This document shows, piece after piece, positions 10,105-58,217 of a DNA stretch of 64,000 nucleotides (position 1 is the first letter of the stretch; each line of letters begins with the position of its first letter). The stretch is from Mobula hypostoma (taxonomy: Eukaryota). The notes below the pieces were generated by a model. It ran no database searches. It was not told the DNA's origin and worked only from the letters and a program-made list of their open reading frames with translations. A program made the position numbers and the translations under genes. Location: contig NC_086101.1 in assembly GCF_963921235.1 (NCBI RefSeq), positions 28,830,001-28,894,000 of the forward strand, written 5' to 3'.

Positions 10105-10107
10105 TTG

Positions 10108-11548: not shown

Positions 11549-11666
11549 CAGGAAGAGGGGTCGGGAAACTTAGAAGAGACTCAGTGAGGGAACGGACTGG
11601 AGTCTCTGGAAAAATACGTTCCCAACAATGTGCAGCGGGACCATCGCAAGGAAAAGACCTTATCCC

Positions 11667-22054: not shown

Positions 22055-22068
22055 GGTGGGGGGGAGAA
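22055..22068 (+). other. Polypurine tract of the Gypsy element
   Basis: GGTGGGGGGGAGAA immediately before the 3' LTR. Confidence 0.8.
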
Positions 22069-25457: not shown

Positions 25458-25708
25458 CACAGATGGCTCCCAGCTGCCAGGGTCTGAGATGTTTCTGGAC
25501 GCGTCCACAATATCCTGAAAAGGGAGGGTGAACAGAGAGAAGCCGTGGTACATATTGGTGTCAATGATTTAGGAAGGAAAAGGGACGAAGTCCTGAGAAA
25601 AGAATACAGGAGTTAGGAAGGAAGCTGAGGAGCAGGACCTCAGGAGTAGTAAAATCTCAGGATTGCGCCTGTTCCACGTGACAGTGAGGATGGGAATAGA
25701 ATGAGGAG

Positions 25709-31961: not shown

Positions 31962-32155
31962 GGAATAGAATGAGGAGACAGGTAAAGGTGTGGCTGAAGA
32001 ATTGGAGCAGGGGAGAAGGATTCAGATTTCTGGATAACTGGGCCCTCGTCTGGGGCAGGTGAGACCTGTACAAAAAGGTCATGTTGCACTTGAATCAAAG
32101 GGGGACCAATATTCTTGCGGGCAAATTTACTGGAGCTGTTGGGAGTGGTTTAAAT

Positions 32156-34114: not shown

Positions 34115-34430
34115 GCAGGGAGAATGGGAACCAGGATGACAGAGCTGAGGATGAGCCTGCAGGTTTACAAGAAGATGATGGGTGTAACATGGATGTAAGG
34201 AAGGACAAGCCAATGATTGGGTACAATTGCAGACAGAGCAAAGAGTTAAATTGTACCACAGAGGCAAAATTCAAAAGGGCGAAGAATGGAGGACTGAAGG
34301 TGCTGTATTTGGAATAAGGTGGATGAACTCATGGCGCAGTTAAAGATTGGTCTGTATGGCATTGTGGGGATCACAAAGCTGTGGCTGAAGAAAGTCCAAA
34401 GCCGGGAGCTTCACATCAAGGGTGTTGTAG

Positions 34431-35795
34431 ATTGAATTGAATTGAATTGACTATTAGTTACATCCTTCATAATCTTTAAGTTACATCTCCATGTAAGTGT
34501 GCAATGTGTAATTTATAGTAATTTATAATAAATATTATGTACAACAGGATAGACAATATTATCATAGAAATTCAGTTGTATCAGCATGAATTAAGCAGTC
34601 TGATGGCCGAGTGCAAGAAGCTGTCCCTCTTGGTCCTGGCTTTTATGTTGTGGTACTGTTTCCCAAATGGTAGCAGCTGGAACATTTTGTGGTTGGGGTG
34701 ACTCAGGTCCCTAATGATCCTTCGGGCCCTTTTTACACACCTGTCTTTGTAAATGTCCTGAATAGTGGGAAGTTCACATCTACAGATATGCTTTAATAAC
34801 CCAGATCTTATTAGGGAGCTGAACATAAAGGATTCCTTAGGAGTCAGTGATCAAAATATGATTGAATTCATTCTGCAATTTGAGAGGGAGAAGCATAACT
34901 CACATGTATCAGTATCACAATGGAATAAAGGGAATGACAGAGGCATGAGAGAGGAGCTTGCCCAGGTGGATTGAAGGGGGATGACAGCAGAGCTGAAGTT
35001 TCTGGAATAGTTCACAAGGCGCAGGATAGATATGCGCCAAAGAGGAAGATGTTCTCAAATGGCAGAAGTAGGCAACTGTGGCTGACAAAGAAAGTTAAGG
35101 ATTGCATAAGTGTCAAGGAAACAGCATATAAGGTAACAAATGTGAATGGGAAGTTGGATGATTGGGAAGCTTTTAAAATCCAACAAAAAGTAACTGAAAA
35201 GACTATAAGAAGGGAAACGATGAAATATGAAGGCTGACTAGCTAATAATATGAAGCAGGACACCAAAAGTTTTTTCAGTTATATAAAGAGTAAAAGGGAA
35301 GTGAGAGTTGATATTAGACCACTAGAATATGATGCTGGTGAGGTAGTAATGCGGGACAAAGAATTGGCAAAGGACCCTAATGGGTACTTTGCATCTGTCT
35401 TCACTGTAGAAGACACTAGCAGTGTACCAGAGGTCTGTGAGTGTCAGAGAGCAGGAGTGGGTGCTTTGCTGTTACAAAGGAAAAAGTGCTAGCCAACTTC
35501 AAAGGTCTTAAGGTGGATAAGTCATCTGAGCCAGATGGACTACGTCCCAGAGTCTTGAGAGAGGTTGCTGAAGAGATAACAGATGCATTGGACATGATCT
35601 TTCAAGAAAAGCCAGGAGATAATAATAAGGCACTAATCAGGCCACACTTAAAGCATTGTGAACAGTTTTGAGCCCCATATCTCAGAAAGGACGTGTTATC
35701 ATCGGAGATAGTACAGAGGAGGTTCAGGAGGATGATTCTGGGAATGAAGGGGTTAACGTATGAGGAGTGTTTGGCAACTTTGGACCTGTAACTAT
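34431..35795. mobile_element. Rex1 3' fragment (-, ~34431-34790) followed by degenerate CR1 ORF2 (+, ~34791-35795)
   Basis: IIRDLSHPNHKMFQLLP (-); SDQNMIEF, KVDKSSEPDGL (+). Confidence 0.75.
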
Positions 35796-38700: not shown

Positions 38701-39225
38701 ATGGAGCAAACAAATTTGTTTTCTTTTTCTTCCTTGTCCCCTACATCTTTGGTCTGAGTGCTCCTGATGTCTGTCCCCTGCCTATCCTCCCTCACACACT
38801 GTCTACTAGGTTTCTCTATTTGTGAACTAACCTCCTCTCTCCTAGTCTCTTTAATTTGATTCCTACCCCCCAACCCATTCTAGTTTAAAGTCAACTCACA
38901 GCCCTCGCAAATCTCCCCGCCAGGATATTGGTGCCCCTAGGAATCAGGTGTAACCCGTCCTTTTTGTACAGGTTGCACCTGTGCCAAAAGAGGTCCCAAT
39001 GATCGAAAAACTTGAATCCCTGCCCCTTGCTCCAATCCCTCAGCCACACACTTATCCTCCACCTCTTTGCATTCCTACTCTCACTGTCGCATAGCAGAGG
39101 CAGTAATCCCGAGATTACTAGATTTGCGGTCCTTTTTCTCAACTCCCTATATTCTCCTTTCAGGACCTCTCCCCTTTTCCTACCTATATCATTGGTACCT
39201 ATATGTACCACGACCTCTGGCTCAC
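35796..39225 (-). mobile_element. CR1 LINE (EN-RT-3' end) plus ORF1 esterase fragment
   Basis: Minus ORFs 35871..36683, 36712..37317, 37530..37928, 37944..38417, 38421..38873 and 38891..39256 (EVVVHIGTNDIG). Confidence 0.9.
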
Positions 39226-42200
39226 TGGAGTTTAAAATAATGTGGAGTGATCTCATTAAAACCTACTGAATGTTGAAAGGACTTGTTGGGGTGGATGTGG
39301 AGAGGATGTTTCCAATGGTGGAATATCCAGAACTAGAGAGCACAGCCTCAAAATTGAGCGGTGGCCCTTCAGAACAGAGGTAAGGAGGAGTTTTTTTTTA
39401 GCCAGAGAGCATTAAATCTGTAGAATGCTCTGCCACAGACTGCCAAGTCTGTGCATATATTTAACGCTGAAGTTGGTCATTTCCTGATTGGTCAGATATG
39501 ACAAGAATGCAGGTGTATGGGGTTGAGTGGGATCTGGATTCAGCCATGATAGAATGCGGAAAGGACTTGACAGGCTGAATAGCCTAATTCTGCTCCTTTG
39601 TCTTATGGTCTGAAAGGTGCAAGAGGCAGTCTGTAGTGTTTCATTGCTGTTGTAGGGTTAGGATTGTGCAGGTTGGTTCAAGAACTGATGTCTGTAGGAA
39701 AGTAGCTGTTGCTGAACCTGATGTTGTGGGATGTCAGTTTTCTGTGCCTCCTGCCCGACAGTAGCAGCAAGAAGACTGCATGATGCGAATGGTGGGAATC
39801 CTTGATGGTAGATGCTGCCTTCCTGAGGCAGTACCTCCTGTAGATACTGCTAGTGTTGGAGTAGTATGTGCCCATGGTGGATCAGGCTGTGACCACCATT
39901 CTCTGCAGCTCTTGTATTCCTGTCTATTGTAGATTCTGTCCCAGGTTTTGATGCAGCTAGTCAGTAATGTCAAGATTTTAAAGAAAGTGATTCTCCTGCA
40001 GAGTCAGTACTGTCCTCCTGGGTCCGTTAACCACCCATTTACACTCATCTAATCTTATTCTTCCCTCATTCGCATCAACACCTTCCCAGATACCACCACT
40101 CACACACACCTCAGGGGTGATTTACAGCAGCCAATTAGCCCACCAATCCCCCCAACTCTGGGGTGTGTGAGGAAATCAGAGCAACCAGGGGAATCCTATG
40201 ATATCTTTCTCTGAGATGACAACACCAGGCAGTGCAGAACTGGGATATGCCCTTCAGCCCAAGATGTTGTGTCAAATTAATTAAACCGGTAACTAAATGC
40301 CTAACTAATCTAAACCCTTCTGCCAATGTCCATATCCTTCCATTCTCTGCAATTCATGAGCGTTTCTAAGTGTTTCGTAAGTACCTCTATTGTATTTGCC
40401 TCCACCACCAGCCCTCACAGCTGATTCCAGACACTGACCACTCTGTAAAATTAACATTGGCCTACAAATATCCTCTGAACTTATTCCCTTTCACTTGAAA
40501 TATATGCCCTCTACTGTTAGTTATTTTGACCCTGGGATGCTCTTGTAATCTTATAAACATCTATCAGATCTTCCCTCAGTCTCTGTCACTCCAGAGAACA
40601 ACTCCTCCTCCACATACACATCACCGAGGATCTCAAATGGTCTGAACATACCAGCTGTGTGGTGAAAAAGGCACAACAGCATCTCCTTCACCTCAGACGG
40701 TTGAAGAAGATTGGTATGGCCCCCCTCCAAATTCTAAGAACTTTCTACAGGGGCACGAATGAGAGCATCATGACTGGCTGTATCACTGCCTGGTACAGGA
40801 ACCGTACCTCCCTTAATCACAGGACTCGGCAGAGAGTGGTGACAACAGCCCTGCTCATCTGGAGATGTGATCATCCCACTATTCAGGATATTTACAAGGA
40901 CAGGTGTGTAAAAAGGGTCTGAAGGATCATTGGAGACCTGAGTCAACCCAGCCACAAACTGTTCCAGCTGCTGTAATCTGGGAAATGGTACCGTAGCATG
41001 AGAGCCAGGACCAACAGGCTCCAGGACTGCTTCTTCCATCAGAGTGCTTAGTTCATGCTGATGCAATTGTATTTCTATGTTATATTGACTATTCTGTTGT
41101 ACATAATATTTATTATAAATTACTACAATTCTACATTGCACACTTGAACGGAGACATAATGTAAAGATTTTTACTCCTCTTGTATATGAAGGATGTAAGT
41201 AATAAAGTCAATTCAACTCAATTCAGTTCAATTCTTATGTTCTCTAATCCAGGAAGCATTCTGGAAAATCTCTTCTGCACTTGGATACCTGGAACAGTCT
41301 TGTTACCATAAGACCATAAGATATAGGAGCAAAATTAGGCTATTTGGCCTAGCAAGTCTGCTCTGCCATTTCATCCAATTTTACTCTCAGCTCCAATCTG
41401 TTGCCTTCTCCCTGTATCCCTCCATATCCTGACCAGTCAAGAATCTCTCAACCTCTGCCGTAAATATACATAACGGCTTGACCTCCACTGCTGCTAAGTT
41501 GCCTGTGGCAAAGGATCCCACAGATTCACCATTCTCTGGCTAAAAAAAAATTCCTCCTCATCTCTGTTCTAAAAGGACACCCCTCTATTCTGAAACTGTG
41601 TCCTCTGGTCTTTGACTCTCCCACCATAGAAAACATCCTCTCCACATTCACTCTATAAAGGGCTTTCACAATTTGACAGGTTTCAAATAGGTCCCACCTC
41701 ATTCTTCGGCATTCTAGTGAACACAGGCCTAGAACCATCAAATGCTCTTTATGTGACAAACCTTTCAATCCAGGAATCATTTCCATGAACCTTCTTTGAA
41801 CCCTGTCCAGTTTCAGCACATCCTTCCTAAGGGGCCCAGAATTGCTCACAATACTCCACATGAGGCCTCACCAGTGCTTCATGAAATCTGAACATTACAC
41901 ATTTGCTTTTATATTCTAGTCCTCTTGAAGTGACTGCTAACTTTCAATCCCACTTGGGCTACATCACTCAGCTTCTTTCCTTTGACATTGATCACTGCAT
42001 TGGTGCTGCTCCGCACATTCAGACAGAACTGGAAATTATTATTTTCCTTGCTCCCAATTCTTAGCCTATTCTCCTCCTCATACAAGGCAATCTAAGTCTT
42101 TCCTACCCTCACTGCACTCACAAATGTCCTTTCAACCTACAGACTCCAACAACTATCTTTACTTTTCGTCCTCCCACTCTGCCTCTTGTGGGACTCCACT

Positions 42201-42320
42201 ACCTCTTTTCTGTGCTCTTTCTCTGTCACCTTTGCTGCGATGATGAGAATTTCTACACTGGTGCCCCGGAAATGTCTTCTGCTTCTCCTTGAACCTTGGC
42301 TTCCTCTCTATCATGGTGGA
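39226..42320. mobile_element. Mosaic of old CR1, Rex1, SINE-like and Penelope fragments
   Basis: CR1 3' ends (39226-39610 +, 41310-41940 -), Rex1 pieces (39615-39965 -, 40600-41230 +), degenerate PLE RT (~41950-42320 +). Boundaries are approximate. Confidence 0.6.
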
Positions 42321-42365
42321 CTTATGTTCCAGTATGTTTGCCTCTGACTTAGAAGCAACCCTATA

Positions 42366-42447
42366 GTGGGAGTTGGTGCTCCTGTTTCCCTGCTGCCCTT
42401 GACCTCCTTTGTGCTGGGGTTTGGGTCGTTCTGTTGGATTGGCTTCA
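42366..42447 (+). CDS. MHC class I-like gene, putative leader exon (5' boundary uncertain, no in-frame ATG)
   Basis: Open frame VGVGAPVSLLPLTSFVLGFGSFCWIGF ends at a strong phase-1 donor A|GTGAGT (42448), 250 bp upstream of the alpha1 acceptor. Confidence 0.6.
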
Positions 42448-42697
42448 GTGAGTATCTGCTTTGGATTTTGTAAATGGCCAGAGCAGTGAAGCAAGTTTTC
42501 ATAGTGTTGGTTGCTCGTGTTTGGGGAGCTAATAAAGGCGGGTGGGAGTGCTGCCTGATCCAGTAGGATGTCTGTTTGGATGTGTATTAATCCATTCAAG
42601 TGGCGAGTATGCCATCAAACTCCCAATTTGTGCCTTATAAATTGTGAGCATCCTTTGTTGTTTTGTGACACTTCTCTCTCTCTATTCTTTTACACAG

Positions 42698-42946
42698 GCT
42701 CACACAGCTTGATGTATTACTACTTCCAATCCATCAGCATTCCCGAAATGCCATCTTTCTTCGGGATTGGGATGCTCGATGACTTGCAGATAGACTACTA
42801 CGACAACACACTCCATGAAGTAGAAGTCAAGTACCAGTGGATCGCAGATGGCTTATCGACCGACTACCGGAAAGAACAGAAAGAAATAGCCGATCAGCTT
42901 CATGAGCTCCTCTCGACATATCTGAAGCCACTCACCTCATTGATTA
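42698..42946 (+). CDS. MHC class I-like alpha1 domain exon
   Basis: Pyrimidine tract plus CAG acceptor, GTGAGT donor, 249 nt, phase 1-1. SHSLMYYYFQSISIPEMPSFFGIGMLDDLQIDYYDN...QWIADGLSTDY matches the class I alpha1 pattern (GSHSLxY, GxxDD, W, DY). Confidence 0.93.
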
Positions 42947-44337
42947 GTGAGTGTCTTTGATCTCCACTACCCTTTGAGTATCACAGTGACTTGCATATTG
43001 CAACATCTTGATGTTCTATTAGATCCGATTATGTTGTATCTAGTTTAAAGTCTTTCAAATCTCTCAAATCTCCATTCTGCTCTCTACCTTCCTTAACTCC
43101 AATTACAAGAATTCCATCCTAATCATCTGGGTAAGTTCTGACCCTTCAAAATAAACTGATTATCCAGTCCTCATTCCCCACGGACCTCTTCAGAGAAACA
43201 GTGAAAATCAAACCCACTGTCTATACAGGCTTTGTCTGGCTCAAACCCTAATCCTAAGCCTGCTCCCCAACTCCAGACTTGGGGATGCTTCAGTCCAGGA
43301 TGGTTGGAACTAAGTCGTCTATGGTTCTTATCTAGTCACCTGCCACAATGACGCTTTCCAGATCGAATTCGGTGCGGGGACTCCGTGCATTAGAACATAG
43401 AATGCTACAACACAGGAACAGGCCCTTTGGCCCAAAATGTTCTGCTGAACTAATTATATTAATAATCAAATGCCAAACTAATCTCATCCTTTCTGCCTAC
43501 ACAATTTCCATGTCCTGCTCGCCTAAGCTTCTTGAACACCCTCTTTGTATCTGCTACTACCACAACCCCTGGAAGCACAACTTAGGAACACGCCATTCTG
43601 TAATAGTCTTACCCTGCACATCTCCATTGAACATACCCCCTTTTCCATCCCCTCTTGTATTAGACATTTCAACTGAGAGAAAAATAATACCAGCTGTCAA
43701 CTTTAAAACAGAGAAAACAGCCCAAATTGGTCAAATCTCTTGTTATAGCACATGCCATCCAATCCAGGCAGCATCTGGTAAGCATCTTCTGCACCTACTC
43801 CAAAGCCTCACCGTCACAGAGTGACCAGAACTGCTGTGTTGCACACTCTGTGCTTATTGACACTGAATACAAACATGTTGCTTTCACAATTCTCCGCCGT
43901 AACTCTCTGCAGTGGACGTGGTTCAGCGCAGACTGTACAGCGCAGTCTCTCACTGTGAGCCCCTGCTCTGACCCACATGTTGACAGAGTCCTTCAATGTG
44001 CCCCCTGCTTTGTATGTACAGTACTGTGCACTGCACAGTGTTTCAACGTGATCTCTGTACTGTGCACTCTGCATAAGTTCAAGCTCGAGTTTATTTCTGA
44101 TCGTAGGCTGACATACACAGGGCACAAATGCCATAAAATTACTGTTTTGCAGCAGCATCATGGTATATTACAGGACATATTAGCATGGAGTCAATTTTAA
44201 ATAAATATGTATAACCTGCACATGTGCAAAGGCATACAACAAAATAAATGTAACAATATTTGTGCAAGATTAAGAGAGAGAAGAATATAATCTAGGGTCT
44301 CGTTAAGGCTTTTCTAGTTGGTTAAGGAATCCGAACT

Positions 44338-46320
44338 AACATAGAAACATAGAAACATAGAAAATAGGTGCAGGAGTAGGCCATTCGGCCCTTCGAGCCT
44401 GCACCGCCATTCAGTATGATCATGGCTGATCATCCAACTCAGAACCCTGTACCAGCCTTCCCCCCATACCCCCTGATCCCTTTAGCCACAAAGCCATATC
44501 TAACTCCCTGTTAAGTATAGCCAATGAACTGGCCTCAACTGTTTCCTGTGGTAGAGAATTCCACAGATTCACCACTCTCTGTGTTTTGCCTAATCTCGGT
44601 CCTAAAAGGCTTCCCTTTATCCTTAAACTGTGACCCCTCGTTCTGGACTTCCCCAACATCGGGAACAATCTTCCTGCATCTAGCCTGTCCAATCCCTTTA
44701 GTATTTTATATGTTTCAATAAGATCCCCCCTCAATCTTCTAAATTCCAATGAGTATAAGCCTAGTCGATCCAGTCTTTCATCATATGAAAGTCCTGCCAT
44801 CCCAGGAATCAATCTGGTGAACCTTCTTTCTACTCCCTCTATGGCAAGGATGTCTTTCCTCAGATTAGGGGACCAAAACTGCACACAATACTACAGGTGT
44901 GGTCTCACCGAGGCCTTGTACAACTGCAGTAGTACCTCCCTGCTCCTGTACTCGAATCCTTTTGCTGTGAATGCCAGCATACCATTCGCCTTTTTCACTG
45001 CCTGCTGTACCTGCATGCCCACTTTCAATGACTGGTGTATAATGACACCCAGGTCTCATTGCACCTCCCCTTTTCCTAATCGGCCACCATTCAGATAATA
45101 ATCTGTTTTCCTGTTTTTGCCACCAAAGTGGATAACCTCACATTTATCCACATTAAATTGCATCTGCCATGAATTTTCCCACTCACCTAACCTATCCAAG
45201 TCACCCTGCATCCTCTTAGCATCCTCCTCACAGCTAACACTGCCACCCAGCTTTGTGTCATCCACAAACTTGGAGATGCTGCATTTAATTCCCTCATCTA
45301 AGTCATTAATATATATATTGTAAACAACTGGGGTCCCAGCACTGAGCCTTGCGGTACCCCACTAGTCACTGCCTGCCATTCTGAAAAGGCCCCGTTTATT
45401 CCTGCTCTTTGCTTCCTGTCTGCCAACCAACTCTATCCACATCAATACCTTACTCCCAATACCATGAGCTTTAAGTTTGCACACTAATCTCCTGTGTGGG
45501 ACCTTGTCAAAAGCCTTTTGAATATCCAAATATACCACATCCACTGGTTCTCCCCTATCCACTCTACTAGTTACATCCTCAAAAAATTCTATGAGATTCG
45601 TCAGACATGATTTTCCTTTCACAAATCCATGCTGACTTTGTCCGATAATTTCACCGCTTTCCAAATGTGCTGTTATCACATCTTTGATAACTGACTCTAG
45701 CATTTTCCCCACCACCGATGTCAGGCTAACCGGTCTATTATTCCACGGTTTCTCTCTCCCTCCTTTTTTAAAAAGTGGGGTTACATTAGCCACCCTCCAA
45801 TCCTCAGGAACTAGTCCAGAATCTAAAGAGTTTTGAAAAATTATCGCTAATGCATCCACTATTACTTGTGCAACTTCCTTAAGCACTCTGGGATGCAGAC
45901 CATCTGGCCCTGAGGATTTATCGGCCTTTAATCCCTTCAATTAACCGAACACCACTTCCCTACTAACATGCATTTCCCTCAGTTCCTCCATCTCACTGGA
46001 CCCTCTGTCCCCTACTATTTCCGGAAGATTATTTATGTCCTCCTTAGTGAAGACAGAACCAAAGTAGTTATTCAATTGGTCTGCCACGTCCTTGCTCCCC
46101 ATAATCAATTCACCTGTTTCTGTCTGTAGGGGACCTACATTTCTCTTAACCAATCTTTTTCTTTTCACATATCTATAAAAGCTTTTTCAGTTAGTTTTTA
46201 TGTTCCCTGCCAGTTTTCTCTCATAATCTTTTTTCCCCTTCCTAATTAAGCCCTTTGTCCTCCTCTGCTGGACTCTGAATTTCTCCCAGTCCTCAGCTGA
46301 GCCACTTTTTCTGGCTAATT
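44338..46320 (-). mobile_element. Intronic CR1 LINE (RT to 3' tail)
   Basis: ORFs 44420..44884, 45056..45265, 45362..45940 and 45941..46168; (CATAGAAA) tail. Confidence 0.93.
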
Positions 46321-46789
46321 AAGATGTCCTCAATGATGGGGAGAGCTGTGCCTGTGATGGGCCTGGTTGAGTCCAGCACCCCCGCAGCTTTTTGGCTTTC
46401 AGGGCTTTGGAGTTTACCTACCGGCTGTCATGTAACCAATCCGGATGCTTTTCACTGTACGTTTGAAAACATTACCATTCATTAATGACAAATTGAATCT
46501 CTTTAAACTTTCCCCTCCCACCCTGCCATTTGAACAGTTGCTCACATTGATTACTGATTCCACGAGACCCTGTGATCTGTGCCACAACTGACAAATGTTC
46601 TATATAGTACACTTCACCCCATGCTCTCGGCCTAAACTGTACACAGTCGCTGACCGTGACCCACTACTTGGTGCACCTCTTAGTCACATAGCATTTACGT
46701 ATTTAGCAGACCATTAGCTAGATGGATATCAGATTTAAGTATTGGAAGCTTCAGCCATTAATGTTAATTAATCTGTTGCTACTTTACAG

Positions 46790-47050
46790 ACCTCAGCTAC
46801 ATACAGGCACTCTGGGGCTGCACGCAATCTGGAAATATGGCCAATGAGATTCTAAAAATCAACGTCCCGGAAATCGGAGAGTTCAGCTGTGATTTGAACA
46901 CATTGAAATGCTCTGGTGCTCTTTTCCCAGCAATGCTCAATGATCAATTGAGCCAACTCAGTTTCACTGACATGTCTGCATTGAAGACGAACTGCATTCA
47001 GTACTTGCAATGGGCTGTTCAGCTTGGAAGAGAAGCATTGGAAAGGCAAG
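46790..47050 (+). CDS. MHC class I-like alpha2 domain exon (GC donor)
   Basis: TTTACAG acceptor, AG|GCAAGT donor, 261 nt, phase 1-1. YIQALWGC...LKTNCIQYLQWAVQLGREALERQ matches the alpha2 pattern (Q..YGC; C..WL..YL..G...L.R). Confidence 0.9.
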
Positions 47051-48295
47051 GCAAGTGGAACATCCTGCGATGGAGAGGGAACTCCCAATTCAGCAACATA
47101 AGGGATACCTCAGTCTGAGACGATTATGGGGCTCTGAGACCGAGATGGTGTGGGCTGTCATGAATCAGGATACTGAACGATTTGATGATCTAACAAATTG
47201 ATGGTGTTCCCAATCTGGGACAGAGAGGGATCTCCAGATCTGGACAGTAAGGAAGCTTCCAATCAGAGATGCAGAGGGATCTCCTCATATGGAAATGAGA
47301 AGGAGCTCCGAAAACAAAATGGTTAGGGGGTTTCCCAACCTGCAGTAATGAGGGATCTCCTAATTTGAAACAGTGAGTTGGTTGGAGTGTATGGGCTACA
47401 GGCCTGGAGGTGGACAGTGAGCCCACGATTGGCTCCATTGGTTCTCTCTGACTGAGGCGTTGAGCAAGGTTGAAGTGGACGAGGCCAAGTGCGGAGGCCA
47501 GGCTGGTGTTTGGCGCCATCTGCTGTGTTTGGCTGGTATTCCTCTCCCTTTTACTAGCTGCTGTTGGAGGAAAGTGCAGGAGGCTTGGGTTCCACATTGC
47601 AGGGATTGATCGGTGAGGCTCGTGGTTGTGACTCTTTTTGGGGGACTTTAGGGTTCGTGTATTTCTGGATTCTGGTTACCCTTTGTTTCCTGTTTCTAAG
47701 TGGTTTGATCAGGGTGCATCAGTGCGCACTGGGCGCTTCAGCGAAGACTGAATCTGCGGCCTGCATTTGGCTAGTGGCAAGGCACTGAACTAAACTGCGT
47801 ACATCTAGACTTGATAAAACCGTAAGATATAGAAGCAGAATGGGGCCATTTGGCCCATCGAGTCTGCTCCACCATTTCATCTGGTCCATTATCCCTCACA
47901 GCTCCAATGTCCTGCCTTCTCCCCGTATCGCTTCATGTCGTGACTATAAAGAATCTATCAATCTCTGCTTTAAATATAGTAAAGATGTGGCCTCCACAGC
48001 TGCCAAGTTGACTGTAGCAATGAATTCCACAGATGTACTGCTCTCTGGGTAAAGAAATACTTCCTGATCTCCATTTTAAAAGGATGCCCCTCTACCTGGA
48101 GTGTCACAAAAATTTACTATTGCTGATTAAACAAGGACACAGACTCCAGTATTCAGTTTAATTACTTAATTACATGACCATGGAGAGCCCTCTAAAAGAC
48201 TCTGCTAAAGTGAGCACAAGCATGGTCTTTTACACCTTAAAATACATGCAATTCAGCAGTTTTCAGGAGTCAGGAGTTCCTGCGTAGACCATATT

Positions 48296-49720
48296 ACCAT
48301 AGAAACCATAGAAACTACAGCACAGAAACAGGCCTTTTGGCCCTTCTTGGCTGTGCCGAACCATTTTCTGCCTAGTCCCACTGACCTGCACACGGACCAT
48401 ATCCCTCCATACACCTCCCATCCATGTATCTGTCCAATTTATTCTTAAATGTTAAAAAAGAACCCGCATTTACCACCTCGTCTGGCAGCTCATTCCACAC
48501 TCCCACCACTCTCTGTGTGACGAAGCCCCCACTAATGTTCCCTTTAAACTTTTTCCCCCTCACCCATAACCCATGTCCTCTGGTTTTTTTCTCCCCTTGC
48601 CTCAGTGGAAAAAGCCTGCTTGCATTCACTCTATCTATACCCATCATAATTTTATATACCTCTATCAAATCTCCCCTCACTCTTCTACGCTCCAGGGAAT
48701 AAAGTCCTAACCTATTCAACCTTTCTCTGTAACTGAGTTTCTCAAGTCCCGGCAACATCCTTGTAAACCTTCTCTGCACTCTTTCAACCTTATTTATATC
48801 CTTCCTGTAATTTGGTGACCAAAACTGAACACAATACTCCAGATTCGGCCTCACCAATGCCTTATACAACCTCATCATAACATTCCAGCCTTATACTCAA
48901 TACTTTGATTAATAAAGGCCAATGTACCAAAAGCTCTCTTTACAACCCTATCTACCTGTGATGCACTTATAGGGAATTTTCTATCTGTTTTCCCAGATCT
49001 CTCTGTTCTACTGCACTCCTCAGTGCCTTAACATTAACCCTGTATGTTCTACCTTGGTTTGTCCTTCCAACGTGCAATACCTCACACTTGTCAGTATTAA
49101 ACTCCATCTGCCATTTCTCAGCCCATTTTTCCAGCTGGTCTAAGTCCCTCTGCAGGCTCTGAAAACCTTCCTCACTGTCTACTACACCTCCAATCTTTGT
49201 ATCATCAGCAAATTTGCTGATCCAATTTACCACATTATCATCCAGATAATTGATATAGATGACAAGTAACAATGGACCCAGCACTGATCCCTGTAGCACA
49301 TCACTAGTCACAGGCCTCCACTCGGAGAAGCAATTCTCTTCTACCACTCTTTGGCTTCTTCCATTGAGCCAATGTCTAATCCAATTTACCAGGTCTCCAT
49401 GTATACCTAGCGACTGAATTTTCCTAACTAACCTCCCATGCGGGACCTTGTCAAAGGCCTTACTGAAGTCCATGTAGACAATATCCACTGCCTTCCCTTC
49501 ATCCACTTTCCTGGTAACCTCCTCGAAAAACTCCAATAGATTGGTCAAACATGACCTACCATGCACAAAGCCATGTTGACTCTCCCTAATAAGTCCCTGT
49601 CTATCCAAATGCTTGTAGATTCTGTCTCTTAGTACTCCCTCCAATAACTTACCCACTACGGACGTTAAACTTACTGGCCTATAATTTCCCGGATTACTTT
49701 TCGTTCCTTTGACAAGGCTC
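48296..49720 (-). mobile_element. Intronic CR1 RT/3' fragment, same subfamily as 12321-15146
   Basis: ORFs 48372..48878 and 48967..49722 are near-identical in protein to 14365..15072 and 13470..14358. Confidence 0.93.
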
Positions 49721-49779
49721 AAGATGCTTCCATACCTTACGAAAACTTAGATACACTACACTCAGTCCTCTCTTCCAGA

Positions 49780-52700
49780 TCATTAATGTATGTCATGAAC
49801 AGTTGCAGCCCCAGCACAGACCCCAATGGCACACCACTCACCACTGACTGCCAACCAGAGAAGCACCCAGGTATCCCAACTCTCTTCTTTCTATTAGTCA
49901 ACCAATCCTCTATCCATGCTAATGCATTAGCCCCAACTCTATTGTTCTATTTTGGTAAACTATCACCAAAGCCTGTACTATAACTTCTGCCATTTCGTCC
50001 TCCCATTGCGTCCATAACATCTGTACTTTGGCATGTTAGACGTGCCCTCCACCTCCACTGTGAAGACTGACACAACATAGATCTAAAGCCTCTGCCATTT
50101 CCTCATTACCCAATATTAATTCCCCTTCTCGTCTTCCAAGGGACTGATGTTCACTTAAGCCACCCTTTTCTGCTTTATATAATTATAACAACTTTTATGA
50201 TCTGCTTTTATATTTTGTGCTAGTTTATTTTCATAGTCTATCTTCCCTTCCTTCACTGCTCGCTTAGTGGTTCTATGTTGCTTTTTAAAGTTCTCTCAAT
50301 CTTGCATTTTCCCACTACTCTTGGCAAATATATACAAACGAGCTTTTAGTTTGATGCTTTCTTTCATTTCCCACCCTTGCTTACTTACTTGCTCCCCACT
50401 TTTAACTGGAATATACTTCTGTTGAACACCGTGAAAAATCTCTTTTAAAGTCTTCCACTGTTCCTCAACCGTCCCACCATATGGTCTGTGTTCCCAGTCG
50501 ACACAAGCCAAATCCTCCCTCATCCCATTGTAGTCTCCACTGTTTAGGCATACAGTAATACAGTAGTTTTCTATGGAACTATTGCGCCCTCCATTTGTAT
50601 GAGAAACTCAATCACACTGTGATCACTCTTTCCAAGAGGATCCCTAACTACAAGATCACTAATTTTACCTGATCATTGCACAGGACCAGAGCTAAGACAG
50701 CACATTTACTTGTAGGTTTAGTGACATGTTGTTCAAGAAAGCCATCATGGATGTATTCAATGAAATCCTCCTTAAGACTGCCTTCATCAACTTGATTCAC
50801 CCAATCTATACCCAAGTTAAAGTCCCCCACGATAACTGCTGTTCCATTCTTACATGCCACAGATATTTGTCTGTTGATTGCCTGTGCCACGGTAATATTA
50901 TAATTCGGTGGTCGATAGAAAACTTCCACCAGTGATTATTTCCCTTTTCTATTCCTAATCTCTGCCCAGATGGATTCAAAATTCTGCTCATTAGATCTTA
51001 TATCGTCTTTCATGATCACCCTGGTCTCATCCTTAACTAAGACCGCTAACCCACCTCCCTTACATTCCTGTCTATCCTTCCATATTACCTGATATCCTTG
51101 GATATTCACTTCCCAATCCTCTCCACCCTGCAACCACAATTCTGTAATGCCCATGAAATCATACACCTTTGTAGTGATTTGTGCCAAAAGTTCACTGACC
51201 TTATTTTGAATACTACAGGCATACAGATAAAGTGCCCTTACACTCATTGTGCTTTTAAAACCTTGTAATCTTTTTCTCTTTTGCACTTGTCTTTTCTTTA
51301 CTCCACCCTTACTTTTCTCTTTTTTATCTTTTGATTTTTCATTATCTTCATCCACAGTTTTTTCTTTTACTTTACCTATACATTTCTGATCTGTTGAACC
51401 CATTTCCCCTACTAAACCAACCCCCTACAATTTAGTTTAAAGCCCTATGCACAGCCCTTGTTATGTGATTCACGAGCAGCCAGGTCCCATCACAGTTCAG
51501 CTGGAGCCTGTCCCATTGGTACAGCTCCCTCCTTCCCCAATACTGGTGCCAATTTCCTGCGAAATCAAACCTACTCCACCCACACCAATCCTTCAGCCAC
51601 GCATATAACACTCTAATCTTCCAAACCCCATGCCAATTTGCTCGTGGCTCAGTAGTAATCCAGAGATTACCACCTTTTCTGTTCTGCTTTTTAATTTAGT
51701 CCCTAGTTGCTCAAATTCCCTCAGTAGAAGGGAAGTTGCTGTTTGCTGTTGTGTGCTGGGGCAGTAGGCTGAGGGTGGCAGACACCAACAGGATCAACAA
51801 ACTCATTCGTAAGACCAGTGATGTTGTGGGGATGGAACTGGACTCTCTCACAGTGGTGTCTGAAAAGAGGATGCTGTCTAAGTTGCATGCCATCTTGGTC
51901 AATGTCTCCCATCCACTACAGAATGTACTGGTTGGGCACAGGAGTACATTCAGCCAGAGACTCATTCCTCTAAGATGCAGCACAGAGCGTTATAGGAAGT
52001 CATTCCTACCTGTGGCCATCAAACTTTACAACTCCTCCCTTGGAGGGTCAGACACCGTGAGGCGAGAGGCTGGTCCTGGACTTATTTCATAATTTACATA
52101 TTACTATTTAACTATTTATTACTATTTTCTATTACTATTCTATTACTATTTATTATTTCTATGACTATTACTATTTACTATTTACTAATAGTAATATTAC
52201 TATTACTATTTCTATTACTATTTATTATTTATGGTGCAACTGTAATGAAAACCAATTTCCCCCAGGATCAATAAAGTATGACTATGACTATGACTATGAC
52301 TAGAACCTCTTTCCTTGTTCTACCCATGCCACACCTTGTCAAAGGCCTTCTGAAAATCCAAGTACACAACATCCACTGATTCTCCTTTGTCTATCCGGCT
52401 TGTTATTTTATTAAAGAATTCCAACAGATCTTCCGTTGAAGAAACTATGCCGACTACATCCTATTTTATCATGTGCCTTCAAGTACCCCAAAGTCCCACA
52501 TTGAACAATCAACTCCAAACAACTGAGGTCAGACGAACTGGTCTGTAGTTTCCTTTCTTCTGTGTCTCTCTCTGCTTGAAGACTGGAGAGATATTTGCAA
52601 TATTCCAATATTCCAGAACCATTCCAGAATCTAAAGATTCTTGAAAGATCATTACTAATGCCTCCATAATCTATTCAGCCACCTCTTGCAGAATCCTAGC

Positions 52701-54720
52701 AGGTACACCATCTTATATTCCATCTTATCCTTCTTAATGATTTTTTCAGTTGCCTTCTGCTGGGTTTTAAAAGTTTCCCAATTCTCTAATTTCCCACTAA
52801 TTTTTGCTCGATTATATGCCATCTTTTTGGCTTTTATGTTCGCTTTGACTTCTCGTTAGCCACCCACCTTGTGTCATCTCGCCTTTAGAATACATCTTCC
52901 TCTATGGGTTGTACATACATACCCTGCGCCTTCTGAATTGCTTCCAGAAACTCCATCCATTTATGTTCTGCCAACATTCCTTTCACTGTTATTTTCAAAG
53001 CAATTTTGGCCAGCTCCTCTCTCATGCCTCTGTAATTCCTTTACTCCACTGTAATCCTGATATATCTGACTTTAGCTCTCCTCAAATTGCATGGTGAATT
53101 CTATTATATTATGATTACTTACCCCAAAGAGTACCTTTACCTTAAGCTCTCTAAACAATTCTGGTTCATTGCACAACACTCAATCCAGAATAGCTGATAC
53201 CCCAGTGGACTCAACCATGAGCTGCTTTAAAAAGCCATCTGGCAAGCATTCTAGAAATTCCACTTCTTGGGATCCAGCACAAAACTGATTTTCCCAATCT
53301 ACCTGCATATTGAAATTCCTCACAACTATTGTAACATTGCCCATTTGGCATGCATTTTCTATCTCCCATTGTAATTTGTAGACCACATCCTTACTAGAGT
53401 TTTGGGATCTGTATATAACTCTCATCAGGGTCTTTTTACCCTTGAAGTTCCTTAGCTCTACCCACAATGATTCAATATCTTCTGACCCTACATCACCTTT
53501 CTAATAATTTGATTTCATTTTTTACCAACAGAGCAATGCCTCCACATCTCCCTACCCTTTTGATACAATGTGTATCCTTCAATGCGAATACACACAAAAT
53601 CATACATGCCATTCTGTAACTGTGCTACAAGTTCATTGACCTTATTCCATATACTGAGCACATTCAAATATATCATCTTTAGTCCTGTATTCACCATTTC
53701 GATTTTGTCCACTTTTTAACATTGCAACTCATCCTGTTGATTACAATTGTGCTCTATCATCAGCCTCTCCTTGCTAGGAGTCCCATTACACACTGCCTCC
53801 GTTTGTAAACCAACTACCTCATCCTCAGCACTATCACTCAGGCTCCTATCCCTGTGTCAAATTAATTTAATCCCTCCTGAACAACTCTAGCAAACCTGCA
53901 TGCAAGGATATTGTGCCCCCTTGGGTTCAGGTGTAACCCGTCCCTTTTGTACAGGCCATACCCAGAAGAGAACCCCTGACCTCTCCACTAAGTCCTTGGC
54001 CACACATACACCTGCCAAATCATACTATTCTTACCCTCACTGGCACGTGGCATGGTCAGAAATCCAGTGATTACTACACTGGGTCCTGTTTTACAGCTTT
54101 CTACACAGCTCCCTCAAATCTCTCTTCAGGACCTCCTCAACTTATCAACCCATTTCATTGGTGCCAAGATGCACCAAGATTTCTGGCTGCTTATCCTCCC
54201 TCCTGAAAATGCAATGGACCTGATCCGAGACATCTGTGATCCAGGCAACTGGGAGGCAACATACCACCTGGGTGTCTCCATCGTGCCCACAGAATCTTGT
54301 CTCTGTTCTCCTGCCTGTGGAATTTCCCATCAACACTGCAGTCTTCTTCACCTCTCTGCTCTTTCTGAGCCACAGCACCAGATTCAGTGCCAGAGAGGAG
54401 GTCACTGTGGTTACCCCCAGTAGGATGTCCCCCTCAACAGTATCTAAAGTGTTACATTTATATTGAGGGGTATGACCACAGGTGTACTCTGCACTGGCTG
54501 AGCATCTCCCCTCCTTCTCCTGACAGTCACCCATTTACCAATCTCCTGCAACCAAGGGTGACTACCTCCCTGTAGCTCCTATCTATCACTTCCTCTTTCT
54601 CCCATATGAAGCTAAGGTCAGTGAGCTGCAGCTCCAGTTCCTGAACACATTCTCCGAGGAGCCGCAGCTTGACGCACCTGGTGCAGATGTGTTTATCCGA
54701 GAGACTGGATGTCTCCCAGA
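49780..54720 (-). mobile_element. Old intronic CR1 fragments (ORF1 to ORF2) with a nested Rex1 3' fragment (+, ~51729-52303)
   Basis: GDFNLGIDW, LYACSIQNKV and HLGTNEMG motifs on minus; Rex1 ORF 51736..52092 with AATAAA(GTATGACT)n tail and TAGAA on both flanks. Confidence 0.8.
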
Positions 54721-55434
54721 ATACTCACATCTCACACACAGTATGAGACACTGCCCCTGGAGTCATTCTCACTACACTATGATGCCCTAACAGACAAGGA
54801 ATGGACAATTAAGAACAAAAATACCCCTGCTTGGATGTTTGATATCCTCTGTGTTGCTAGCTCACTTTTTGCTGTTTGTGCAATCTGTTCTCTCCCTGCA
54901 TCTTGCGTGTTTGATGTTTTCTTTGAACGGGTTCCTTGGTGCCTCTTTGTTCCTTCACTGCATCGGAGGATAAACCTCAGAGTTGTATTCTGTATAAACA
55001 CTTTGGAAATTAATCTACTTTGAATCTTTGAGTGAGGCCGCTCCCAAATGGAGACATTGACTGATCTCCCGGTCTGGGGCAGTGAGGGACCTTCTGATCA
55101 ATACTGCTGTGCTGAGGGCATTCTCCATCTTGCAGTTTGAGGATGATCTGAATTTGGGATATTGCACGACTGCTGGACTGGGAATAGTGCCTGTGACCTT
55201 GATCTGGACCTGTCCGATGAATGAACGTAATCTCTGTCTGTAGTCTGCATGAGCTTGGGCTGGGGAGGCTGATTTCAGATTAGATGGTGAGTGTAATAGT
55301 GAGGCAGATCAGGTTCTGAGGCCGTGAAGGATGTGAGAGTAATCCCAACATTGAACACTGTAACTTCAGTCTGTAACGGTAAGGTAACATCAGCCTGTGT
55401 TGAGGTGGTGACATAATTTTTGATTCTTCCCCAG

Positions 55435-55701
55435 TTTCTCCAAAGACTCAGGTGTTGACAAGGAGGCCAACAGCTACTGAAGGCGAGAGTCTGTCGTGCA
55501 TCATCACTCCCTTCTACCCCCGTGCTATCAATGCCACTTGGCTGAAGAATGGGCAGGTTGTCTCTGAGGGCTACAAGGTGACTGTGCTACCAAACTACAA
55601 TGATACATACTGGATGGAACTCGTCATTGAGCTGCAGGGCAACGACCCGAACATCTATGCTTGTCATGTCGAGCACAGCACCCTGCCAAAGGCGAAGGGA
55701 G
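55435..55701 (+). CDS. MHC class I-like alpha3 (Ig C1-set) exon
   Basis: TTCTTCCCCAG acceptor, G|GTAGGT donor (alternative G|GTACAG at 55717), phase 1-1. VSPKTQV...LSCIITPFYPRAINATWLKNG...YACHVEHSTLP. Confidence 0.93.
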
Positions 55702-57979
55702 GTAGGTCATCGTACGGTACAGAAATTGCTTCATTCTGCCTGTGGTGGCTCATGGACTCGTGCAGCAGAGAAGGAGGCTCTTCAGCCTGTCTGATTCATG
55801 CAAACCCTCTAGTTATCAAAAACGCTTGGCCCGTCCCCTTCTTTAACTTAATGATTCAACTGTCATCTAGATACGTCTTGAAAATTATGACGGTTTCTGC
55901 CTCCACCATCTCCTCAGGCAGTCCATTCCCAACTCCAACACGCCCTTGGTGAAAGTATTCATCTGTAGATTCCCTGTAAACCTCTTAGTCATTATCTTAA
56001 ACCTACGTCGAGTTATAGGCACCTTTACTACGGGGAAGGGTTTACAACTGTTCAAGCAAACACATGAAGTGGAAGAATAAACTGCAGCAAGTTAAACCTG
56101 TAGCATTCTTCAGAATCAGAATCAGGTTTATTGTTGCTGGCATCTGTTGTGAAATTTGTTAACTTAGCGGCAGCAGAACAATGCAATGCATGATAATATA
56201 GAAAAAATATAAAACAAGTAAGTAAATCAACTACAGTAATTATATATATGTATATTGAGCAGATTTTAAAATAGTGCAAAAACAGAAATAATATATATTT
56301 TTTAAAATTCTTCCAACATTTTCTATGTGTTTCCTATCTACACCCCTAATAAACCTGTATAACTCCATCAGGTCCATCCTCAGTCTCCTCCCATCTAAAG
56401 AAAACAAAACCTGCGTATCTATTCTCTCTTCCCATTCCATCTGAGCCACATTCCGGCGAATCTCCTCCGCACTCTGTCCAATGCAATCACATCTCTCCTC
56501 TGCTCTGGTGACCAGAACTGTAAACAATACTCAGAATGTAGCCTCACCGGTGTTTTATAAAGCTGTACCATAATTCCCATGCCCTTGTATTCTATGCACT
56601 GATAATTGGTATCTCATACACTTCCTTCACCACCCTATTTACCTCTTTGAAAGACCTAATCAAGAATCTCCACCATAAAGCTGCACCATAAGTTCCCTTC
56701 TCTTGAATTCTATGCCCTAATCAATGAAATCCAGCATCCTGTAGGCTATCTTCACCACCTTGTCCTCTACTTTGAATGACTTGCTCAAGTAGCCCCACTC
56801 CTTCTCACACACCTCTGAAAATTTCTTAATTCCAAGAACATATCCCATTTCCATTTTGGAAGTTATTATTTACCGTGCTCTTTTATCACTCGAATTAAAT
56901 CTGTTCCTTCTGCTCACCAGATGTTACAGAAGCAGTTGAGCTGTTGGTCAAAGAAATATAGTAAGAACTCAACAGAAAGAACAACTAAGAAGCAATTGGG
57001 ACTGTGGGGAAGACCTGACTGTCAAGTGGTCACTGCTTGGCTGTTGGGTGTTTGATTGTCATAGATTCATAGAATTCTGCAGCAGAGAAACAGACCCTTC
57101 AGCCCAACACACCTTTGTCAATCAAGATTCCGGTTCAAAGAAGTCCCATTTATCCTGGCCCATATCTCCCTAAACCCTTCAGATCCATGTACTGGTAGAT
57201 GTATCTTTTAAAAGATGTTAACTTGTCTGCCTCAACCACTTCTTCTGGCACCCATAAATTGACCATCATGTTGCCACTCAGGTTCCTGTTACATCTTTTC
57301 TCTCTTAACTTAAACCTATACCATCAGGAGCCCTGAAAAATTATTGTGCATTCTCTCTATGCCCCTCAAAACTTTATATACCTCTCTCTATAACTCAGCC
57401 CCCTACACTCCAGGGAAAATAATCCCAGCCTATCTTATCTCTCCTTATATCTCAAGCATTCCATTCCTGGCACCATCCTTGTGAATCTCCTCTGCATCCT
57501 TTCCATCCTAATGACATCCTTCCTTCCTCAAAGCACCTTCCATTCTCTTATGTTCCAATACTACCCACATAGGACTACCCTGCCCCGCACCCTGCGCTCC
57601 CCCCCCCCCGCCCCGCTTCTCCCGACTCCCATCAGGCACAGATACAAAAGCCTGAAAGCATGTACTACAATGATCAATGAACACGTCTGTCTTTCTCCTG
57701 TGAGAAAATTGAATGGACCCAAACATAGTAAGATAGGCATCTGACCTCACAATCGAACTTTTAATGGTCTTGCATCCTATTGCCAGCTAGCACCACACAT
57801 CCGTTGTAAAAGTAATACATTACTCTGCATTCTGTTATTGTTTTCCCTTGTACAAACTTAATATCCTGATGTAATGATCTGTATGGACGGAATGCAAACC
57901 ATGTATTTCCACGCTACCTGGTAACTGGTGACAATAATAAAATAATTTATACATTTACCGATCTTTACTTGGTGAACAG

Positions 57980-58096
57980 GAGTTGGTGAGCCCCATGGTG
58001 CAGGTCCTATGTTGGGGCTGATGACTGTGTTTGCAATAATCTTTGGAGTGATGTAGAGGTGCAGCAAGGAGAGAACCAAGGCATCACTGGAGGTGG
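57980..58096 (+). CDS. Connecting peptide/TM exon with in-frame TAG (58054-58056)
   Basis: CAG acceptor, phase 1: GVGEPHGAGPMLGLMTVFAIIFGVM*RCSKERTKASLEV, donor G|GTAAAC at 58097. Confidence 0.7.
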
Positions 58097-58182
58097 GTAA
58101 ACGTACAGATGCCTTTGTTAAACCTGTTTGCTGTGACAGTATTAGACTGTACATTCAATCTCCTCTCTTTTCTCCTTTGCAG

Positions 58183-58217
58183 ATCAGCATTTGGCTCTAA
58201 GTCAAGCACAGTTCTGA
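58183..58217 (+). CDS. Putative cytoplasmic-tail/terminal exon (DQHLALSQAQF*)
   Basis: Strong pyrimidine tract plus TTTGCAG acceptor after an 86-nt intron. It is translated only if the upstream TAG is absent. Confidence 0.55.

What the first reader, a model, noticed from the sequence alone, without database searches (positions are those of the whole stretch)
42366..58217. Hidden, highly divergent non-classical MHC class I-like gene; possibly an undescribed cartilaginous-fish lineage
Seen: six phase-1 exons spread over 16 kb of TE-filled introns splice into leader-alpha1(83)-alpha2(87)-alpha3(89)-TM-tail. By-eye alignment to classical class I keeps the structural residues H3, D28/29, the alpha1 W, Q96, C101-C164 and the Ig C-W-C. 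Of the peptide anchors only Y7 and Y59 look retained; the R/Y84, T143, K146, W147, Y159 (A) and Y171 (A) equivalents are lost. The alpha2 YDGxD motif is replaced by INVPEIGE. Established: sharks carry non-classical lineages (UBA, UCA, UDA, UEA) besides classical UAA. Inference: this molecule does not present peptides conventionally and may define a further lineage with a non-peptide ligand or stress-ligand role. I cannot assign it to a named lineage from memory.
Basis: partly seen in the sequence, partly recalled or inferred. Interest (0 to 1): 0.88.

Follow-up and report, generated by a model that had tools for sequence, protein, structure and literature searches.

The report
Devil-ray copy of shark UFA gene
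The exons are real and form an intact MHC class I-like gene, but it is not a new lineage: it is a devil-ray copy of the named shark/ray "UFA" lineage, already in RefSeq, with a relative whose crystal structure is solved.

Summary
Its residue observations hold: Y7 and Y59 are kept and the other six peptide-end anchors are lost.

Spliced with a leader exon at 7731-7824, 35 kb upstream, the exons give a 315-aa protein identical to RefSeq XP_062903552.1 of Mobula hypostoma. In all three domains the best solved relative is PDB 8GM8, "shark nonclassical MHC class I, UFA". In a tree the gene sits inside a 100/100-supported UFA clade, with sharks single-copy and rays multi-copy. Its nearest relative is a Mobula birostris gene.

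- The "leader" at 42366 is a decayed relic with GTG in place of ATG.
- "Exon 6" lies after the stop and is not coding.
- The alpha2/alpha3 intron is GC-AG.
- The TAG at 58054 is the normal family stop, not a lesion.

Every UFA protein ends in 13-15 hydrophobic residues with no cytoplasmic tail, which looks like a GPI-anchor signal.

The likely function is inferred: a GPI-anchored class I fold with a hydrophobic groove that carries lipid-like ligands.

Another agent of this scan reached the same UFA/GPI reading on other DNA of this genome (s1-141819).

The parts
7731..7824 (+). True leader (signal-peptide) exon: 31 codons plus 1 base, donor CAG|GTGAGG. The family-conserved start (MESW...) is the second ATG, at 7749.
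   Evidence: tblastn of P0095 gives 100% over residues 1-32. The sequence was read. The spliced CDS equals P0095. The 5'UTR and leader of a skate mRNA align to 7684-7824 at 74%.
7825..42697 (+). Intron 1, 34,873 bp, GT-AG, filled with LINE copies and a Ty3/gypsy-type element. No other UFA-like exon lies inside it.
   Evidence: ORF list. Pfam RVT_1, Exo_endo_phos_2 and PNMA hits. tblastn of the gene's own exons and of paralogues finds nothing else.
42366..42446 (+). It has GTG where the family ATG was, no in-frame ATG, and diverges after PVSLL. The donor CA|GTGAGT is still present.
42698..42946 (+). Alpha1 exon (83 codons, phase 1).
   Evidence: Pfam MHC_I 22.7 bits, below the cut-off. 8gm8_A E 2.1e-13.
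46790..47050 (+). Alpha2 exon (87 codons, phase 1). Cys125-Cys183 are the C101-C164 equivalents. An extra Cys148/Cys155 pair is present. The donor is GC (AAG|GCAAGT).
   Evidence: The only PDB sequence hit is 8gm8_A, E 8.6e-9.
55435..55701 (+). Alpha3 exon, an Ig C1-set domain (89 codons, phase 1).
   Evidence: Pfam C1-set 53.6 bits. 8gm8_A E 1.3e-23.
57980..58056 (+). Last coding stretch: small-residue site G-V-G, a 7-residue spacer (EPHGAGP), a 15-residue hydrophobic end (58009-58053) and the TAG stop (58054-58056). This is a GPI-signal-like C-terminus with no cytoplasmic tail.
   Evidence: A skate mRNA has TAG at the same place.
58057..58217 (+). Not coding in the annotated product; presumed 3'UTR.

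Best explanation
This is a Mobula hypostoma paralogue of UFA, a non-classical MHC class I lineage shared by sharks and rays.

Gene structure (shown):
- The gene has five coding exons over 50.3 kb.
- A distal leader at 7731 is spliced over a 35-kb transposon-filled intron to alpha1, alpha2, alpha3 and a short hydrophobic-tail exon.
- A decayed older leader sits 250 bp upstream of alpha1.

The product (shown for the fold, inferred for the rest):
- The product has the class I fold.
- It lacks six of the eight residues that clamp peptide ends.
- Its alpha1/alpha2 domains are more hydrophobic and less charged than those of classical chains.

Inferred mechanism:
- The C-terminal hydrophobic segment is most likely cleaved and replaced by a GPI anchor. 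It has no stop-transfer residues and no tail.
- The protein then sits on the outer leaflet of the cell membrane.
- There it displays a lipid-like or other hydrophobic ligand to lymphocyte receptors, as reported for shark UFA.
- With no cytoplasmic tail, it cannot use the tyrosine-motif endosomal recycling that CD1 uses.
For: Identity:
- The spliced window CDS is identical to P0095 = XP_062903552.1.
- The CDS span of 50,326 bp equals the annotation.

Lineage:
- phmmer scores 8gm8_A at 212.6 bits, E 7.6e-62. UGA (9ch4) scores 103 bits and MR1 or classical chains about 70-100 bits.
- The AF2 model has pLDDT 87.6 and pTM 0.80. Its top Foldseek hit is 8gm8_A, titled 'shark nonclassical MHC CLASS I, UFA', E 1.9e-27, TM 0.81-0.84.
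- The ML tree gives a UFA clade of 29 rows at 100/100. The shark and batoid halves mirror the species tree. The window gene pairs with M. birostris P0085 at 100/97.

Groove:
- The anchor residues are lost.
- Alpha1/alpha2 hydrophobic fraction is 0.41-0.44 against 0.32-0.38 in the other chains. Charged fraction is 0.15-0.18 against 0.22-0.26.

C-terminus:
- All full-length UFA proteins end after 13-15 hydrophobic residues.
- In most copies, including the window's, a conserved small triplet (G-V-G or G-V-S) lies 10 residues before that stretch.
- UGA-like and classical chains have a 20+ residue TM, basic residues and a tail.

RNA:
- A 1,336-nt skate transcript contig carries the uninterrupted family CDS with the same stop.

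Literature:
- UFA is called CD1-like and maps in an MHC-Ib cluster (PMC10751288).
- Crystal structure and mass spectrometry suggest lipid binding (PMC12562908, personal communication).
Against: - No RNA from Mobula was available, so the 7824-to-42698 junction and the GC-AG intron rest on the RefSeq model and on the same 50-kb layout of the M. birostris orthologue.
- GPI anchoring was judged by rule only; no predictor or assay was run.
- Lipid binding is known to me only from a review's personal communication about shark UFA. This ray paralogue differs from shark UFA at about 60% of positions.
- This paralogue differs from its M. birostris orthologue mostly in alpha2: 14 of 25 differences.
- CD1 chains are not among the 50 best structural matches.
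Confidence: 0.85

Rival explanations
1. It founds an undescribed cartilaginous-fish class I lineage.
For: Pfam MHC_I scores below its cut-off for alpha1 and misses alpha2. RefSeq gives only borrowed names such as 'MR1-like', 'CD1d-like' and 'zinc-alpha-2-glycoprotein-like'.
Against: It nests at 100/100 in the clade holding nurse-shark UFA. The PDB title names 8GM8 as UFA. UFA is named for sharks and rays in PMC10751288 and PMC12562908.
Confidence: 0.03
2. It is a recently dead gene. The proximal leader decayed, and the RefSeq model merely borrows an orphan leader 35 kb upstream. The body exons are then not translated.
For: The relic leader has lost its ATG. Intron 1 is 34.9 kb, whereas whole UFA genes elsewhere span 13.5-16.7 kb. 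No Mobula transcript was found for the exact protein.
Against: The distal leader is intact, has a strong donor and the right phase, and has no other UFA exons to serve within the window. All four body exons are open. The M. birostris orthologue has the same 50-kb layout and an intact ORF. The 25 differences from it include no stop or frameshift.
Confidence: 0.12
3. The hydrophobic end is a short, tail-less transmembrane anchor and not a GPI signal.
For: Hydrophobic C-termini can be either, and no GPI predictor was available. In the skate copies the stretch after the last proline is longer, at 23 residues.
Against: 13-15 hydrophobic residues are short for a membrane span. No basic stop-transfer residues follow. 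A small-residue triplet sits at the spacing expected of a GPI attachment site and is conserved between most shark and ray copies.
Confidence: 0.2
4. It presents nothing. Like ULBP/RAE-1 or MIC it may be a ligand for NK-type receptors, and the expansion in stingrays and devil rays reflects receptor-ligand co-evolution.
For: The likely GPI anchor resembles ULBP/RAE-1. There are at least 5 copies in each of two myliobatiform species against one per shark. Some stingray copies have lost groove-domain cysteines.
Against: The alpha3 domain is retained and highly conserved, unlike ULBP/RAE-1, which lack it. The review reports lipid in the shark UFA groove.
Confidence: 0.15

Closest known systems
Shark UFA (Ginglymostoma cirratum; PDB 8GM8; UniProt A0ABF7PPZ1)
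   Same: It is the best match in every domain and the only PDB sequence hit for alpha2. Both share the short alpha1 helix end, the loss of YDGxD, the extra Cys pair in alpha2 and the conserved INATW alpha3 motif. They fall in the same clade. Full-length shark orthologues, such as Cetorhinus and Carcharodon, share the tail-less hydrophobic C-terminus.
   Different: Identity is about 40%. The devil-ray and stingray main clade has a 3-residue shorter alpha2 helix region. Copies number at least 5 in each of two myliobatiform species against one per shark. This copy uses a leader 35 kb away.
Shark UGA (PDB 9CH4) and its relatives P0059 and P0077
   Same: It is the sister lineage at 100/99 support. 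Both are non-classical and share the alpha1 pattern (SHSL.Y.Y...LP....G.LD).
   Different: UGA keeps the DG..F motif of alpha2. It has a full transmembrane segment, basic stop-transfer residues and a cytoplasmic tail. It scores 103 bits against 213 for UFA.
CD1 (lipid-presenting class I-like molecules of tetrapods)
   Same: Both have a hydrophobic, low-charge antigen-binding domain and lack the peptide-end anchors. The literature calls UFA CD1-like and lipid-binding.
   Different: No specific sequence kinship was shown. No CD1 chain is in the top 50 Foldseek matches. Only 6 of 30 family members touch the MHC_I_3 Pfam model. There is no cytoplasmic YXXZ sorting tail.
GPI-anchored class I-like molecules (mouse Qa-2; ULBP, RAE-1, MILL)
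   Same: Both have a C-terminal hydrophobic signal without a cytoplasmic tail (from established knowledge of these proteins; for UFA).
   Different: They are unrelated lineages. ULBP and RAE-1 lack alpha3. GPI anchoring of UFA is not shown.
MR1 (the name RefSeq gives the product)
   Same: Both have the class I fold and weak overall similarity.
   Different: MR1 chains score about 75 bits against 213 for UFA. The name is an automatic nearest-named-hit label, not an orthology call.

Membership tests
UFA lineage (elasmobranch MHC-Ib) | Groups with the reference UFA protein (nurse shark, 8GM8) to the exclusion of other class I lineages | tested here: met
   The clade of 29 has 100/100 support and includes P0107, the 8GM8 chain. 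UGA-like, classical-like, tandem and lungfish rows fall outside.
UFA lineage (elasmobranch MHC-Ib) | Best sequence and fold match is UFA in all three extracellular domains | tested here: met
   (212.6 bits). Foldseek rank 1, TM 0.81-0.84, entry title names UFA.
UFA lineage (elasmobranch MHC-Ib) | CD1-like (hydrophobic) antigen-binding region that lacks the classical peptide-end anchors | tested here: met
   2 of 8 anchors are kept. Hydrophobic fraction is 0.41 and charged fraction 0.17, against 0.32-0.38 and 0.22-0.26. This is sequence-level only; groove geometry was not measured.
UFA lineage (elasmobranch MHC-Ib) | Binds lipid | not testable with these tools
   Known only from a personal communication in PMC12562908.
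UFA lineage (elasmobranch MHC-Ib) | Maps in the MHC-Ib cluster next to the class II region | not tested
   The gene lies on a 199-Mb chromosome record. Only unchecked scan notes place class II elements about 2.6 Mb away.
Classical MHC class Ia (UAA) | Eight conserved residues that bind peptide termini (Y7, Y59, Y/R84, T143, K146, W147, Y159, Y171) | tested here: not met
   Only Y7 and Y59 are present.
CD1 | Specific kinship to CD1, and a cytoplasmic tyrosine sorting motif | tested here: not met
   No CD1 chain is in the top 50 fold matches. There is no cytoplasmic tail at all.
MR1 | Closest named relative is MR1 | tested here: not met
   MR1 scores 74-76 bits against 212.6 for UFA.
GPI-anchored surface proteins | C-terminal signal made of a small attachment-site triplet, a short polar spacer, and a terminal hydrophobic stretch with nothing after it | tested here: met
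   The window protein has G-V-G, then EPHGAGP, then 15 hydrophobic residues and the stop. This pattern is kept in most ray and shark UFA copies. The check is rule-based; cleavage and anchor addition are not testable here.

The most novel reading that the evidence does not exclude
Stingrays and devil rays may have expanded a single-copy, GPI-anchored, CD1-like presenter (UFA) into five or more paralogues whose differences concentrate in alpha2. Without a cytoplasmic tail these molecules could not recycle through endosomes as CD1 does. They would then be a second, raft-based way of showing hydrophobic ligands, or a diversified set of NK/T-cell ligands. This copy also survives on a captured leader 35 kb upstream after its own leader decayed.
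Probability: 0.25. Interest if true: 0.5.

Novelty: new member of a known kind. Interest (0 to 1): 0.2.

Why it matters
It matters little as a discovery. The lineage is named, has a solved structure, and this exact protein is in RefSeq under a misleading automatic name ("MR1-like").

The work has three uses:
- It corrects the gene model.
- It shows that the batoid genes carrying assorted borrowed names all belong to UFA.
- It records two points I did not find in the papers I could read. The tail-less, GPI-signal-like C-terminus is conserved across nearly all UFA copies found. UFA is multi-copy in myliobatiform rays, whereas each shark in the databases has one.

These points bear on how an ancient CD1-like molecule would be trafficked and loaded.

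Tried and rejected
Rejected: there is no ATG, a TGA lies upstream in frame, and similarity to family leaders is weak.
- An ATG-bearing alternative at 42240-42315 (MMRISTLV..., donor G|GTGGAC), found by my own scan. Rejected as unrelated to any family leader and having a weak donor; not excluded by RNA.
- Atlas look-up with alpha2 alone. It returned only SAM-domain noise under 0.8.
- First AF2 run with 30 family sequences. It gave pLDDT 54 and was unusable. A 70-row alignment gave 87.6.
- Paper searches for 8GM8, 9CH4 and UFA/UGA found no primary paper. PMC7002201 and PMC8454915 are not held. The supplements of PMC10751288 do not mention UFA.
- DNA of the M. birostris, M. hypostoma-scaffold and Cetorhinus loci could not be fetched because the files are too large. 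No dN/dS and no cross-species check of the relic leader or the GC donor was therefore possible.
- Other UFA-like exons in the window: none found.
- Model coordinates are not exposed to scripts, so groove volume and the Cys148-Cys155 distance were not measured.
Full report
**What is in the sequence.**
Each is a multiple of three in length, enters and leaves in phase 1, and has an AG acceptor.
- Alpha1 matches Pfam MHC_I at 22.7 bits, below the cut-off of 28.3.
- Alpha2 matches no Pfam family.
- Alpha3 is a clear C1-set Ig domain.

A fifth exon starts at 57980. It encodes G-V-G-E-P-H-G-A-G-P followed by 15 hydrophobic residues and a TAG at 58054-58056. The introns carry LINE reverse-transcriptase and endonuclease ORFs, and intron 1 also holds a Ty3/gypsy-type element. 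The window holds only one copy of each exon.

**The gene model needs three corrections.**

1. The leader is elsewhere.
It has no in-frame ATG, and a TGA lies seven codons upstream.
- A homologue search led to P0095, RefSeq XP_062903552.1 of Mobula hypostoma.
- tblastn of P0095 placed its first 32 residues at window 7731-7826 with 100% identity.
- Joining 7731-7824 with the four downstream exons gives 948 nt. The translation is identical to P0095 over all 315 residues.
- The CDS span, 7731 to 58056, is 50,326 bp. This is exactly the span on record for that protein in GCA_963921235.1.
- The 42366 element aligns only weakly to the true leader, with GTG where the family's ATG (MESW...) stands. It is a relic proximal leader.
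- The M. birostris orthologue (P0085, 92% identical) also spans 50 kb, so the arrangement predates the split of the two species.

2. The alpha2/alpha3 intron uses a GC donor (AAG|GCAAGT). No GT donor nearby gives the annotated ...ERQ-V-SPK... junction.

**What it is.**
- Each domain finds PDB 8gm8_A as its best solved relative by sequence: E 2e-13, 9e-9 and 1e-23. For alpha2 it is the only hit.
- The whole protein scores 212.6 bits to 8gm8_A, 103 to 9ch4_A, and about 70-100 to MR1 and classical chains.
- A first AlphaFold run on 30 family sequences was poor, at pLDDT 54. A 70-row alignment gave pLDDT 87.6 and pTM 0.80.
- Foldseek puts 8gm8_A first, with E 1.9e-27 and TM 0.81-0.84.
- The library gives the entry titles: 8GM8 is 'Crystal structure of shark nonclassical MHC CLASS I, UFA' (released 2024-11-27). 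9CH4 is '... UGA' (released 2026-03-18).
- The 8GM8 chain is the nurse-shark protein P0107.

**Family and tree.**
Database searches found about 30 proteins, all from elasmobranchs.
- Sharks have one each: Cetorhinus, Carcharodon, Mustelus, Pristiophorus, Heterodontus, Chiloscyllium, Scyliorhinus, Heptranchias and Ginglymostoma.
- Amblyraja and Narcine have one each, and Pristis has two.
- Mobula birostris and Hemitrygon akajei have five each.
- Mobula hypostoma has about four sequences, of which one is partial and two are 95% identical. Hypanus sabinus has two.

An IQ-TREE analysis of 40 rows gave these results:
- The family is one clade at 100/100 on a long stem.
- It splits into a shark half and a batoid half (99/98), as the species do.
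- Nurse-shark UFA sits beside Chiloscyllium.
- The window gene pairs with M. birostris P0085 (100/97).
- The UGA-like proteins (P0059, P0077) form the sister lineage (100/99).

The gene is therefore a ray member of UFA. PMC10751288 names UFA as a CD1-like MHC-Ib lineage that maps in an MHC-Ib cluster. PMC12562908 says UFA and UGA occur in sharks and rays and, from crystal and mass-spectrometry data given as a personal communication, bind lipids. I found no primary paper in the library.

I aligned the protein with a mammalian class I-like chain, a bamboo-shark classical-like chain, a lungfish chain and a UGA-like chain.
- Kept: H3, Y7, D29/D30, W51, Y59, Q96, C101 and C164.
- Lost: the equivalents of Y/R84, T143, K146, W147, Y159 and Y171.
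- The alpha1 helix end is four residues shorter, and the YDGxD motif is replaced.
- UFA alpha1/alpha2 domains are 41-44% hydrophobic and 15-18% charged. The other chains are 32-38% and 22-26%. This is a sequence-level test only.
- The extra Cys pair (Cys148/Cys155 in P0095) is present in most family members, including nurse-shark UFA. Some stingray copies have lost it.

**The C-terminus.**
- All full-length UFA proteins stop after 13-15 hydrophobic residues (23 after the last proline in the two skate copies). No basic residues and no tail follow.
- In most copies a proline precedes this stretch, and a small triplet (G-V-G in most rays, G-V-S or G-S-S in most sharks) lies ten residues before it.
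- UGA-like, classical-like and lungfish chains have a 20+ residue membrane span followed by basic residues and a tail.
- By the accepted rules for GPI signals, this pattern is that of a GPI-anchor signal. This is inference; no predictor or assay was available.
- The TAG is therefore the family's normal stop, not a lesion.
- A 1,336-nt contig from a skate RNA-seq run (Logan SRR13269337) carries the uninterrupted CDS of P0110 with TAG at the same place. In at least one relative the exons are thus spliced as predicted and the short end is transcribed.

**How it most likely works.**
- Shown: an intact class I-fold gene of the UFA lineage.
- Inferred: the chain is made with the distal leader. Pairing with beta2-microglobulin is assumed and was not tested. 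The chain receives a GPI anchor and shows a hydrophobic, probably lipid, ligand at the cell surface.
- The lack of a tail means that any loading in endosomes cannot depend on the tyrosine motif that CD1 uses.
- Rivals: a dead gene with a borrowed leader (about 0.12), a tail-less transmembrane anchor (about 0.2), and a pure receptor ligand with no cargo (about 0.15).

**Verdict.**
It is neither hidden nor a new lineage. Another agent of this scan reached the same UFA/GPI reading on another piece of this genome (s1-141819). Interest is low.

Noticed in passing
window 58057-58092; L001 1134-1175: Just after the TAG the frame reads basic residues: RCSKERTK in the window and RRGAMRRE in a skate mRNA. 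This looks like the remains of a stop-transfer or cytoplasmic segment. The DNA after the stop is about 75-80% alike between skate and devil ray, which is similar to the 5'UTR, so it may only reflect slow elasmobranch evolution. Stop read-through was not tested.
   Followed up: partly
window 10442-21493: A Ty3/gypsy-type retroelement lies inside intron 1, on the gene's strand. It includes a PNMA-like gag ORF (94 bits) and ORFs at about 19.5-21.5 kb that looked pol/integrase-like by eye. The one tested by Pfam (20969-21490) matched no family.
   Followed up: partly
window 23036-25189 (-): A 717-aa LINE ORF2 with endonuclease and reverse-transcriptase domains, nearly full length. Most of the LINE pieces seen in the gene's introns are antisense to the gene.
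   Followed up: partly
P0009 (Mobula birostris XP_072115027.1): A 654-aa predicted protein with two complete class I ectodomains in tandem. In the tree it groups with classical-like shark chains, not with UFA. It probably corresponds to the tandem-ectodomain gene noted earlier in this scan (s1-141773).
   Followed up: partly
P0001, P0094 (Hemitrygon akajei, Hypanus sabinus isoforms X2): RefSeq predicts UFA isoforms of 231 aa that skip the alpha2 exon in two stingray species. All exons are phase 1, so skipping keeps the frame.
   Followed up: no
P0088, P0089, P0090, P0092 (stingray UFA paralogues): Some stingray copies have lost the extra alpha2 Cys pair. Two (P0090, P0092) appear to have lost the C164 equivalent as well, so part of the expansion may be degenerating or changing function.
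   Followed up: no
window 7440-7520: Upstream of the true leader lie a GAS-like TTCCAGAA, a T-rich ISRE-like stretch and a CCAAT-type box (CTATTGG). No clear S-X-Y module was seen by eye.
   Followed up: no
window 58615-58814: A 200-base run of N about 560 bp downstream of the stop. It was left as it is.
   Followed up: no
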